The notes under the pieces were generated by a model that ran no database searches, was not told where the DNA came from, and saw only the letters and a program-made list of their open reading frames with translations. Shown piece after piece: positions 14,120-56,825 of a DNA stretch of 64,000 nucleotides. Within the stretch, counting starts at the first letter, position 1. The number at the start of each line of letters is the position of its first letter. Position numbers and translations under genes: made by a program. The stretch is from Octopus bimaculoides (Eukaryota): assembly GCF_001194135.2 (NCBI RefSeq), contig NC_068985.1, positions 39,058,588-39,122,587 on the forward strand, in the 5' to 3' direction.

Positions 14120-14410
14120 AAGGCGCGTAGCTAAGTAGTTAAAGCATTCGATTCACGATCGAAAGATCGTGAGTTCAACTCTCGGAGATCTGTTGTGTCC
14201 TTGAGCATGACACTTTATTTCACGTTGCTGCAGTCCACTCAACTGGCAAAAATGAGCAGTAGCTGTATTTCAAAGCGCCAGTCTTGTCACACTCTTCACA
14301 CTCTGTATCACGCTGAATCACCCTGAGAACTACGTTAAGGGTACACATATCTATGGAGTTCTCAGCCACTTACACGTTAATTTCGTGAGAAGACTGTTCC
14401 GTTGATCGGA
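14120..14410 (+). mobile_element. SINE family C, near full length
   Basis: Head GGCGCGTAGCTAAGTAGTTAAAGC...GAGTTCAACTC, then TGTGTCCTTGAGCA.GACACTTTATTTCACGTTGCT.CAGTCCACTCA.CTGGCAAAAATGAG, and tail ending GTTCCGTTGATCGGA. Confidence 0.85.
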
Positions 14411-55166: not shown

Positions 55167-55906
55167 TGTACGTACGTATATACATGACCACATATACATG
55201 CATGTATGTAATTATGCACGTGTCTATGTGTGTATGTATGTATGTGCATACTCATGTATTTCTAGATATTTATATATATTTGTCTTTATCTGTATAAGTG
55301 CTTATATGTGATCATCTTTATATTTATCCACAGCTGTAAAGCTTTTAACGTTCATCGGCTTCCTCTCATTCTCCTTCTTCTCGTCATTATTTTCCAGTCT
55401 ATTTATTCAGCTACTCTTCTCACACAATAAACTTTTCTTTTCGTCCAAACTATTTAACTATCAATAAACATAGGTATTTATATAAGCAAAAATACGTCAT
55501 TACTCCATTTCTACTCTCCAGCCACATTGCTGCTTCAACAAGAGGAATCAAAGTGTGTACATACATATATACATACATACACACATACATATGTGTGCGT
55601 ATGTATAGACAATGCATGATGCAGAATTATTTCAAACAAAACGTAATGTATATATATTTTGTACGACTCTTAATCTATCTTTTAGTTCCCCTCATACTTC
55701 CTTCCCCTTTTCTTTTTCTCGTTCCCTCTCTCTCCCTCACATTTCTTAGCGCTCTCTTTCTTTACCTCCCACCCTTTTACCCTCGTTTATCTCCCTTGAA
55801 TCTTTCACTTTGTCTCTGATATTTGTTTTCTAATCCTTCAATCCTACTGCCCGCTAACCCTCTCTCCTCCTTCCACGTGACCGTGGAAAAGAATAAAACA
55901 CAAGAC

Positions 55907-56302
55907 CTGCCATGTTGACTTGGCTATAACTATTAATATCCAGTACCGCTGTCGTAGTCTCCTTTAGAGAGACTTAGAAATATTAATATCTCTATTTCTG
56001 AAAACCAGTGGATGTATTCCACTGAAATTAGATAAATAACCTTCGTACAGACAGTCAGCAGCGACGCCTGGTGGGTTCGGCTGCTCTGCATTGACATGGG
56101 GCAATACCCCGAAACTAGTCTAGTCTGCAGATACCAATCCAGCAAGGGGAAGCTGCTGACCTCCCCTGTTCGAAGGTTATAAAAGACACAGGTTCGTGTG
56201 CCACATAGCTAGCTAGAGGCGATGGCCTCTTGGAGCTAATCAACGGGAGCATTCGTCCTATTTTTTGGACTGCCATGTTGACTTGGCGATAACTATTAAT
56301 AT
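55907..56302 (+). mobile_element. Retrozyme-like / Penelope pLTR-like unit (363-bp period, 33-bp terminal direct repeats) with a decayed hammerhead ribozyme
   Basis: CTGCCATGTTGACTTGGC(T/G)ATAACTATTAATAT occurs at 55907-55939 and 56270-56302 (32/33 identical). There is a hammerhead-like fold at 56086-56130 and long enclosing stems. It ends in (TA)n. Confidence 0.65.
56086..56130 (+). ncRNA. Degenerate minimal type I hammerhead ribozyme motif (probably inactive copy)
   Basis: Stem I CTGCA/TGCAG; core TTGACAT (cf. CUGANGA); stem II GGGG-CAATA-CCCC; GAAA; palindromic CTAG loop; GUC cleavage triplet; extra TAGTC duplication after the site. Confidence 0.6.
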
Positions 56303-56377
56303 ATATATATATATATATATTCTAGTAAAGGGATGCGTGGCGTTCGATCATATATTGATATAACTAATATATAAATA

Positions 56378-56825
56378 TACAGTGGTTGTGTGGTAAGTAG
56401 CTTGCTTACCAACCACATGGTTCCGGGTTCAGTCCCACTGCGTGGCACCTTGGGCAAGTGTCTCCTGNNNNNNNNNNNNNNNNNNNNNNNNNNNNNNNNN
56501 NNNNNNNNNNNNNNNNNNNNNNNNNNNNCTATAGCCTCGGGCCGACCAAAGCCTTGTGAGTGGATTTGGTAGACGGAAACTGAAAGAAGCCCGTCATATA
56601 TATGTATATATATGTATGTGTGTGTATATGTTTGTGTGTCTGTGTTTGTCCCCCCAACATCGCTTGAAAAACCGATGCTAGTGTGTTTACGCTCCCGTAA
56701 CCTAGCGGTTCGGCAAAAGAGGCCGATAGAATAAGTACTAGGCTTACAAAGAATACGTCGATTTTCTCGACTAACGGTGGTGCTCCAGCATGGCCTAAGT
56801 CAAATAACTGAAACAAGTAAAAGAG
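56378..56825 (+). mobile_element. SINE family B, full length (interrupted by a gap)
   Basis: Head GTGGTAAGTAGCTTGCTTACCAACCACATGGTTCCGGGTTCAGTCCCACTGCGTGGCACCTTGGGCAAGTG, internal (TA/TG)n, and tail ending GAAACAAGTAAAAGA. Confidence 0.9.

What the first reader, a model, noticed from the sequence alone, without database searches (positions are those of the whole stretch)
55871..56302. Retrozyme-like 363-nt unit: hammerhead fold, rod-like structure and terminal redundancy suggestive of a circular RNA template
Seen: (i) 33-bp direct repeats 363 bp apart (32/33 identical), then (TA)n. (ii) A type I hammerhead layout at 56086-56130: CTGCA-TTGACAT-GGGG CAATA CCCC-GAAA-CTAG-TC|TAGTC-TGCAG. Restoring CUGANGA (3 substitutions) and deleting the duplicated TAGTC gives a textbook minimal hammerhead with a palindromic tetraloop and a GUC site. 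(iii) The motif is enclosed by GTCAGCAGC 56054-56062 / GCTGCTGAC 56152-56160 (9/9) and ATAACCTTCGTACAG 56036-56050 / CTGTTCGAAGGTTAT 56166-56180 (14/15). (iv) Further hairpins: GTCTC/GAGAC, CAGTGGA/TCCACTG, GAGGC/GCCTC, GCCA/TGGC, and TTCCACG/CGTGGAA just upstream. No coding capacity is evident. Known: Penelope-like pLTRs carry minimal dimer-forming hammerheads, and metazoan non-LTR retrozymes of a few hundred nt give circular RNAs. Inference: one monomer plus a short redundancy is what reverse transcription around a circle would leave. This copy is probably catalytically dead but may mark an undescribed cephalopod retrozyme family.
Basis: partly seen in the sequence, partly recalled or inferred. 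Interest (0 to 1): 0.85.

Follow-up and report, generated by a model that had tools for sequence, protein, structure and literature searches.

The report
Decayed hammerhead retrozyme copy, abundant family
This 396-base stretch is one worn-out copy of a very abundant short repeat whose family consensus encodes a complete self-cleaving hammerhead ribozyme, so it belongs to the known class of animal "retrozymes", here in a lineage where I found no published description.

Summary
The unit occurs once in the window but roughly 10^3-10^4 times per genome in DNA runs of at least six coded organisms. Head-to-tail unit junctions are present in DNA.

Putting the family's majority letters into the window creates the only full hammerhead in 64 kb (56085-56131: helix I 6 bp, II 4 bp, III 4 bp, cut after C56125). 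This motif appeared in 0 of 300 window shuffles and 0 of 30,000 unit shuffles.

- T56097 is private to this copy. The family has A9 at over 99%, so this copy is probably dead.
- U3 and A8 are family-wide. They are the known U3-A8 covariant of the C3-G8 pair, not damage.
- The "duplicated TAGTC" builds a 4-bp helix III. Relatives without it have the minimal 1-bp helix III with a palindromic CUAG or CAUG loop.

Helix I variants fit as complementary pairs, and only N7 varies in the core. Family RNA exists and crosses the unit junction, but neither cleavage nor circles are shown. Verdict: a new member of the non-LTR retrozyme kind, of moderate interest.

The parts
55907..56269 (+). One full 363-nt monomer of the repeat family. 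It differs from the organism-A majority sequence at about 21 positions (about 6%).
   Evidence: Depth jumps from 63.5 to 1e5-1e6 at about 55907.
56270..56302 (+). 33-nt terminal redundancy: the start of a second unit, or a Penelope-type tail. It repeats 55907-55939.
   Evidence: 32/33 identical. Both copies carry the same private A (55918 and 56281) where the family has G at about 99%, so both were copied from the same template or from near-identical ones.
56085..56131 (+). Type I hammerhead motif. Helix I is 56085-90 with 56126-31. The core is U3 U4 G5 A6 C7 A8 at 56091-96, with A9 at 56097 (T in this copy). Helix II is 56098-101 with 56107-110, loop 56102-106. G12 A13 A14 are 56111-113. Helix III is 56114-117 with 56121-124, loop GUC 56118-120. 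C17 is 56125.
   Evidence: The descriptor scan finds this as the only hit in the window once majority letters are inserted. It appeared in 0/300 and 0/30,000 shuffles.
56125..56126 (+). Predicted self-cleavage site (GUC|U, between C56125 and U56126).
   Evidence: This follows from the hammerhead numbering applied. No pile-up of RNA read ends is seen here, so cleavage is inferred, not shown.
56097..56097 (+). Private T in this copy, at core position A9. It probably inactivates the ribozyme.
   Evidence: A is read in 99.5-100% of family depth in X1, X6, X14, X16, X17 and X18, and in 100% of RNA reads.
56116..56120 (+). One copy of the 5-nt duplication (TAGTC twice, at 56116-56125) that lengthens helix III from 1 bp to 4 bp.
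   Evidence: It is the dominant form in organism A, where depth stays flat across it. It is absent in organism D, where depth falls to 0 after 56116. Forms without the duplication, GAAA-CTAG-TC-TGYAG, appear as loose-end consensi, and a 'left out 5' at 56115 is reported.
56036..56180 (+). Long imperfect stem that encloses the hammerhead (56036-50 with 56166-80; 56054-62 with 56152-60).
   Evidence: (I19). The family majority letter A at 56046 makes the outer stem 15/15.
56299..56321 (.). (TA)n microsatellite that abuts the 3' end of the element.
   Evidence: Many other copies end in (AT)n at unit position 55995 (loose ends). (TA)n is a reported preferred target of Penelope-like elements (PMC8557442).

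Best explanation
Positions 55907-56302 are a decayed 1.09-unit insertion of a 363-nt non-autonomous retroelement of the animal non-LTR retrozyme type.

Shown here: the family carries a complete type I hammerhead on the + strand with a U3-A8 core. It is present in thousands of copies in several related genomes. It occurs head to tail in DNA. It is transcribed, and it often ends against (TA)n.

Inferred life cycle, by analogy with published retrozymes:
1. Multimeric transcripts are cut after C17 (window C56125). In the form with the 5-nt duplication and its 4-bp helix III the ribozyme could act as a monomer. In the minimal form, with a 1-bp helix III and a palindromic loop, it would act as a dimer.
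2. The 363-nt monomers are ligated into highly base-paired circles.
3. A Penelope-like element's reverse transcriptase copies them by target-primed synthesis at (TA)n nicks, running more than once round the template.

This would leave one unit plus a 33-nt redundancy. The window copy itself has A9 changed to U, lies about 6% from the consensus, and is most likely inactive.
For: (1) Inserting the family majority letters gives the only full hammerhead in the window. Chance gave 0/300 window shuffles and 0/30,000 unit shuffles.

(2) Variation follows the pattern expected of a hammerhead.
- U3, U4, G5, A6, A8, A9, GAAA and UC show no listed variant (at 25% or more in four organisms, 45% or more in two, 8% or more in RNA).
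- N7 is seen as C, U or A.
- Helix I strands occur as CUGCA/UGCAG, CUACA/UGUAG and CCACA/UGUGG.
- Helix II changes are G-C to G-U, or A-U.
- Loop III is CUAG or CAUG, both palindromic.

(3) The U3-A8 core is a published natural covariant in Penelope-element hammerheads (PMC4209133). C3-G8 is an established Watson-Crick pair (PMC3884650).

(4) Summed depth is about 1e6 against about 60 in the flank. 'Goes back about 359' joints with 60 nt or more on each side show tandem units in DNA.

(5) The consensus circle folds at -142 kcal/mol, z -8.4, better than the window copy. GC is 46-47%.

(6) There is no coding capacity: the longest stop-free frame is 91 aa with no homologue, there are no Pfam domains, and there is no tRNA.

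(7) RNA reads and high-depth RNA contigs cross the unit junction.

(8) The 33-nt tail and the (TA)n target match the published Penelope insertion signature.

(9) The architecture (helix I 6 bp, helix II 4 bp, short palindromic helix III, tandem repeats of about 300 bp) matches the published definition.
Against: - No Rfam hammerhead model hits the window copy, even at E up to 10.
- Depth across 56125/56126 is flat in three RNA-seq runs, with no pile-up of read ends. Both orientations are equally covered, so neither cleavage nor a defined RNA strand is shown.
- Junction-crossing RNA is not diagnostic of circles, because DNA tandems exist.
- Linkage of the two helix I strands in single molecules is direct only for CUGCA/UGCAG. 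It rests on an 11-nt overlap for CUACA/UGUAG and is inferred for CCACA/UGUGG.
- No individual additional copies could be retrieved, so no formal covariation statistic was possible.
- My descriptor allowed U3-A8 only after I had seen the sequence.
- Activity of this U3-A8 ribozyme is untested.
Confidence: 0.75

Rival explanations
1. The unit is a pseudo-LTR (terminal repeat) of an autonomous Penelope-like element, or a solo pseudo-LTR, not a separate non-autonomous family.
For: Hammerheads, including U3-A8 cores, sit in Penelope pseudo-LTRs. The 30-40 bp tail and the (TA)n target bias are Penelope traits. A 2026 preprint finds retrozymes to be sister to pseudo-LTRs.
Against: DNA contigs join unit end directly to unit start with a 363-nt period in three organisms. 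No RT or GIY-YIG ORF or Pfam domain is found in the window. However, 27 N gaps hide 8 kb of it.
Confidence: 0.13
2. It is an ordinary satellite or tandem repeat that carries a fossil hammerhead with no present function. The transcripts are read-through noise, and the 33-nt redundancy is a truncated array.
For: Both RNA orientations are equally covered, there are no cleavage ends, and overall expression is modest at about 400 reads per 12 million. Tandem junctions exist in DNA.
Against: The core is invariant and the helices stay paired across at least six organisms and several subfamilies. The consensus folds better than the decayed copy. The RNA pool is enriched for one subfamily: 56241, 56242 and 56251 are at about 65% in RNA but below 45% in DNA. 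One variant reaches contig depth 735-1153. Many copies end at different unit positions against (TA)n, which suggests insertion rather than array decay.
Confidence: 0.1
3. The hammerhead-like layout is a chance resemblance inside some other transposon (SINE or MITE).
For: Rfam finds nothing. The window copy fails even a relaxed descriptor.
Against: Shuffles gave 0/30,000. The independently derived family majority repairs the motif. There is no tRNA-like part, and the repeat finder reports no terminal inverted repeat for the unit.
Confidence: 0.02

Closest known systems
Metazoan non-LTR retrozymes (Cervera & de la Pena 2020, PMC7229834), for example the mussel, coral and axolotl Rtz_331/353 repeats, and newt satellite 2
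   Same: Type I hammerhead with a 6-bp helix I and a 4-bp helix II. Short or palindromic helix III in the form without the duplication. Tandem monomers of a few hundred bp (363 here). Low GC, no ORF, LTR, PBS or PPT. Strongly self-paired RNA. Thousands of copies.
   Different: The core is U3-A8 instead of C3-G8. In organisms A, C and F a 5-nt duplication gives a stable 4-bp helix III. Circular RNA and self-cleavage are not shown here. The papers I read name no cephalopod.
Minimal hammerheads in Penelope-like element pseudo-LTRs (Cervera & de la Pena 2014, PMC4209133), including the Schistosoma U3-A8 variants
   Same: The U3-A8 core covariation. Dimer-type minimal helix III in some subfamilies. 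A link to Penelope-style insertion (tail, microsatellite target).
   Different: Those motifs have a long helix II (7-8 bp) and a short helix I (4-5 bp), and they flank an RT/GIY-YIG ORF about 3 kb apart. Here the helices have the canonical sizes and units abut every 363 nt with no ORF.
Plant LTR retrozymes (Cervera et al. 2016, PMC4918200)
   Same: Non-autonomous retroelements that use hammerheads to make circular RNA intermediates.
   Different: The plant elements have type III hammerheads inside LTRs, PBS and PPT, 4-bp target duplications, a size of 600-1000 nt and high GC.

Membership tests
Hammerhead ribozyme, type I | Conserved core: C3/U3, U4, G5, A6, N7, G8/A8, A9 ... G12, A13, A14 ... 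A15.1-U16.1, H17, with position 3 pairing with position 8. | tested here: met
   Met by the family majority sequence. The window copy itself fails at A9, which is T56097.
Hammerhead ribozyme, type I | Three helices around the core. Helices II and III are capped, and helix I is open and starts right after the cleavage site. | tested here: met
   Helix I has 6 bp, II 4 bp and III 4 bp. Found in 0/300 and 0/30,000 shuffles.
Hammerhead ribozyme, type I | Helices are kept through compensatory changes among relatives. | tested here: inconclusive
   The complementary helix I variant sets and the palindromic loop III variants come from loose-end consensi. Linkage within single molecules is only partly shown.
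Hammerhead ribozyme, type I | Score above the Rfam gathering threshold for a hammerhead model. | tested here: not met
   No hammerhead hit at the gathering threshold or at E up to 10 for the window copy. The consensus could not be submitted to that tool.
Hammerhead ribozyme, type I | Site-specific self-cleavage. | not testable with these tools
   RNA reads show no pile-up of ends at 56125/56126, which neither proves nor excludes cleavage.
Metazoan non-LTR retrozyme | Hammerhead inside short tandem repeats of 150-450 bp, from dimers to multimers. | tested here: met
   The period is 363. Unit-end to unit-start joints have 60 nt or more on each side in DNA contigs. Array lengths are unknown.
Metazoan non-LTR retrozyme | Low GC and no LTR, PBS, PPT or coding capacity. 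| tested here: met
   GC is 45.7-46.8%, which is below 50% but just above the 45% also quoted in the paper. No ORF homologues or domains were found.
Metazoan non-LTR retrozyme | Highly self-paired monomer RNA. | tested here: met
   The circular fold of the consensus is -142 kcal/mol, z -8.4, with 62% of bases paired.
Metazoan non-LTR retrozyme | Expressed as small circular RNAs. | tested here: inconclusive
   Junction-crossing reads and contigs exist in RNA, but the same joint exists in DNA.
Penelope-like element pseudo-LTR | Flanks an RT plus GIY-YIG ORF. | tested here: not met
   No such ORF or domain is found in the window. N gaps limit this test.
Penelope-like element pseudo-LTR | A 30-40 bp tail at one end and insertion into microsatellites such as (TA)n. 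| tested here: met
   The 33-nt redundancy abuts (TA)n. The criterion is taken from PMC8557442.

The most novel reading that the evidence does not exclude
In some species a 5-nt duplication has switched the ribozyme from the dimer-dependent minimal helix III to a monomer-competent 4-bp helix III. That would be a natural experiment on how these elements tune self-cleavage against circle stability.
Probability: 0.45. Interest if true: 0.6.

Novelty: new member of a known kind. Interest (0 to 1): 0.5.

Why it matters
The family would add a large animal group to the range of hammerhead retrozymes. It also shows why standard searches miss such families: the U3-A8 core falls below the Rfam models. 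Its abundant natural ribozymes have the non-canonical core pair, and two helix III designs occur in sister species. That makes the monomer-versus-dimer cleavage question directly testable with natural sequences. For annotating this genome, it names a repeat of about 10^4 copies and explains structured, junction-crossing transcripts that could otherwise be mistaken for back-spliced circular RNAs.

Tried and rejected
- Rfam at the gathering threshold on the whole window, and at E up to 10 on 55700-56460, gave no hammerhead.
- I could not retrieve other copies as readable loci. Two metagenome scans and one viral-contig scan with conserved patterns gave 0 hits. A protein search with the 91-aa stop-free frame of the consensus gave 0 hits. 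A covariance model or a formal pair count was therefore not possible.
- A blastn of the unit against the window found only itself, the 33-nt repeat and (TA)n noise.
- A very narrow read layout (56072-56145) listed few variants, because differences near contig ends are filtered out.
- A search for ribo-depleted ('Inverse') RNA libraries found none.
- tRNA-derived SINE was rejected: no tRNA.
- MITE was rejected: the repeat finder reports no terminal inverted repeat for the unit.
- The 33-bp repeat as a target-site duplication was rejected, because it is the start of the next unit in other copies.
- The upstream hairpin 55871-55888 was rejected as part of the element, because it has single-copy depth.
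- Literature searches for hammerhead or retrozyme together with octopus gave no description of such a family.

Full report
**1. The observation**

The sequence is as described.
- CTGCCATGTTGACTTGGC[T/G]ATAACTATTAATAT occurs at 55907-55939 and 56270-56302. The two copies are 32/33 identical and 363 nt apart, and none were expected in shuffles.
- The string at 56086-56130, the 9/9 and 14/15 stems around it, the small hairpins and the (AT)n run at 56299-56320 are all at the stated coordinates.
- The unit folds much better than dinucleotide shuffles on both strands: z -5.5 and -6.9.
- No Rfam family, hammerheads included, matches this copy even at E up to 10.

**2. A high-copy family, found in tandem**

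Within the window the unit is unique. When contigs of public DNA runs are laid on it, summed depth rises from 63.5 in the left flank to 1e5-1e6 from about 55907 onward. This is seen in organisms A, B and C and, for the central region, in D, E and F. That suggests about 1e4 copies for the best-covered parts and a few thousand for the central part. The estimate is rough, because contig word depth is a flat average.

The element therefore starts at 55907. DNA contigs also contain joints that go back about 359 nt (56264/5, then CTGGA, then 55907) with 60 nt or more on the shorter side. So units do lie head to tail beyond the 33 nt seen here.

**3. The family majority sequence contains a complete hammerhead**

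The majority letters of organism A differ from the window at about 21 of 363 positions. I put them into the window and scanned both strands with a hammerhead descriptor:
- core [C/U]UGAN[G/A]A, with position 3 able to pair with position 8;
- helix II closed directly after the core, then GAA;
- helix III from A15.1 to U16.1, then H17;
- helix I starting at the next base.

The real window gave no hit at any stringency. The window with majority letters gave exactly one hit, at 56085-56131, with helix I 6 bp, II 4 bp and III 4 bp. At that stringency there were 0 hits in 300 dinucleotide shuffles of the whole window and 0 in 30,000 shuffles of the unit.

The motif reads UCUGCA-UUGACAA-GGGG(CAACA)CCCU-GAA-ACUA(GUC)UAGU-C|UGCAGA, with the cut after C56125.

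**4.

(a) T56097 is private to this copy. A is read in 99.5-100% of family depth in six organisms and in all RNA reads.

(b) U3 (56091) and A8 (56096) are not damage. No listed variant occurs there in any run. C3-G8 is a Watson-Crick pair in the active fold (PMC3884650). U3-A8 is a published natural covariant in Penelope-element hammerheads (PMC4209133).

(c) The 'duplicated TAGTC' does not need deleting. It makes helix III ACUA/UAGU with a GUC loop and puts the GUC| site directly against helix I.

**5. Comparative evidence**

Loose-end consensi from other organisms reveal sister forms.
- CTACA-TTGATAA-GGGG-CAAATA-CCCT-GAAA-CTAG-TC-TGTAG occurs in organisms D, E and F. The two halves overlap by 11 nt.
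- A second form has CCACA-TTGAAAA-GGGG on the 5' side, and ...GAAA-CTAG-TC-TGTGG is seen on the 3' side.
- A third form has loop III CATG.

These forms lack the duplication. In organism D depth drops to 0 after 56116, so the duplication is absent there. In organism A depth stays flat, so the duplicated form dominates.

Across all forms U3, U4, G5, A6, A8, A9, GAAA and UC stay fixed, while N7 is C, U or A. The helix I strands fit as Watson-Crick partners. G56088A and C56128U also occur at comparable frequencies. Helix II changes keep pairing (G-C, G-U, A-U).

In raw RNA reads the 46-nt motif has one polymorphic site at 8% or more (56128, which keeps G-U pairing). The next 34 nt have nine.

This is the pattern expected of a real ribozyme. 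The limit is that I had consensi, not individual copies. Linkage of helix I strands in single molecules is direct only for the main form.

**6. Structure and coding**

The consensus monomer, folded as a circle, reaches -142.2 kcal/mol with z -8.4 and 62% of bases paired. That is better than the window copy. The majority A at 56046 makes the outer stem 15/15. The fold is a long arm carrying the hammerhead plus a branched half, not a plain rod.

GC is 46-47%. The longest stop-free frame (91 aa) has no homologue. No Pfam domain, RT or GIY-YIG is found in any long frame of the window, and there is no tRNA-like part.

**7. RNA**

Three raw RNA-seq runs of organism A give about 400 family reads per 12 million, in both orientations equally. 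There are 23-49 reads per run across the unit junction (56288 to 55926). No pile-up of ends appears at 56125/56126, and depth across the site is flat.

In RNA contigs one variant reaches depth 735-1153 and also crosses the junction. The RNA pool is enriched for one subfamily: letters at 56241, 56242 and 56251 are at about 65% in RNA but below 45% in DNA.

So the family is transcribed, but neither cleavage nor circles are shown. Junction reads can come from DNA tandems, and spanning reads fit both uncleaved precursors and religated circles.

**8. How this copy arose**

The copy is 1.09 units long and ends inside TTAATAT against (TA)n. Many other copies end at unit position 55995 against (AT)n. 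Penelope-like elements are reported to prefer (TA)n targets and to leave a 30-40 bp tail at one end (PMC8557442).

Both copies of the 33 nt share a private A (55918 and 56281) where the family has G at about 99%. They were therefore copied from one template or from near-identical neighbouring units.

It fits a Penelope-type tail equally well. A truncated array is not excluded.

**9. Comparison with known elements, and novelty**

Animal non-LTR retrozymes are defined by type I hammerheads in tandem repeats of 150-450 bp with low GC, no LTR, PBS or PPT, and strongly paired circular RNAs of 170-400 nt (PMC7229834). A 2026 preprint derives them from Penelope pseudo-LTRs. This family meets every feature that could be tested, except that circular RNA is inconclusive and self-cleavage is untestable here.

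It differs in the U3-A8 core and in the helix III duplication. The papers I could search or read describe no such family in octopus or other cephalopods. One genome paper only reports 235 Rfam Hammerhead_1 hits in giant squid.

Verdict: a real feature and a new member of a known kind, of moderate interest.

Noticed in passing
window 56381-56467 and 56529-56595 (split by an N gap): An extremely abundant repeat directly downstream, with summed depth 1e7-6e7 in all four DNA runs, about 50 times the retrozyme. Its sharp 5' ends lie at 56381-56387, usually preceded by A/T-rich sequence and AGGCGCAGG. It looks like the genome's dominant SINE-type element.
   Followed up: no
window 56327-56370: Another repeat of about 1e5-2.6e5 summed depth starts at about 56327, between the (TA)n run and the SINE-like element. 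The shared upstream consensus in other copies is ...AAAACTTACTTGG. Its identity is unknown.
   Followed up: no
window 55629-55870: A CT-rich low-complexity stretch upstream, with moderately raised depth (1e3-1e4) and many family-level variants. It is a separate, lower-copy repeat or simple sequence, not part of the 363-nt unit.
   Followed up: partly
window 14128-14183 (+): The only Rfam hit at the gathering threshold in the window is a tRNA match (37.4 bits) that covers model positions 8-63 only. It may be a tRNA-derived repeat or a pseudogene.
   Followed up: no
RNA runs X27 and X40-X42, laid on 55926-56288: One sequence variant of the unit dominates the RNA pool. It carries 56014A, 56015G, 56227T, 56241T, 56242C, 56251T and 56266G, and CTAAGGCTTGGCTACT in place of 56071-56085. 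It reaches contig depth of about 1000 in X27, which suggests one strongly expressed locus or a young subfamily.
   Followed up: partly
whole window: There are 27 runs of N totalling 8025 bases, and very many (TA)n and (CA)n microsatellites. This is a gap-rich short-read scaffold, so elements next to gaps may be incomplete.
   Followed up: no
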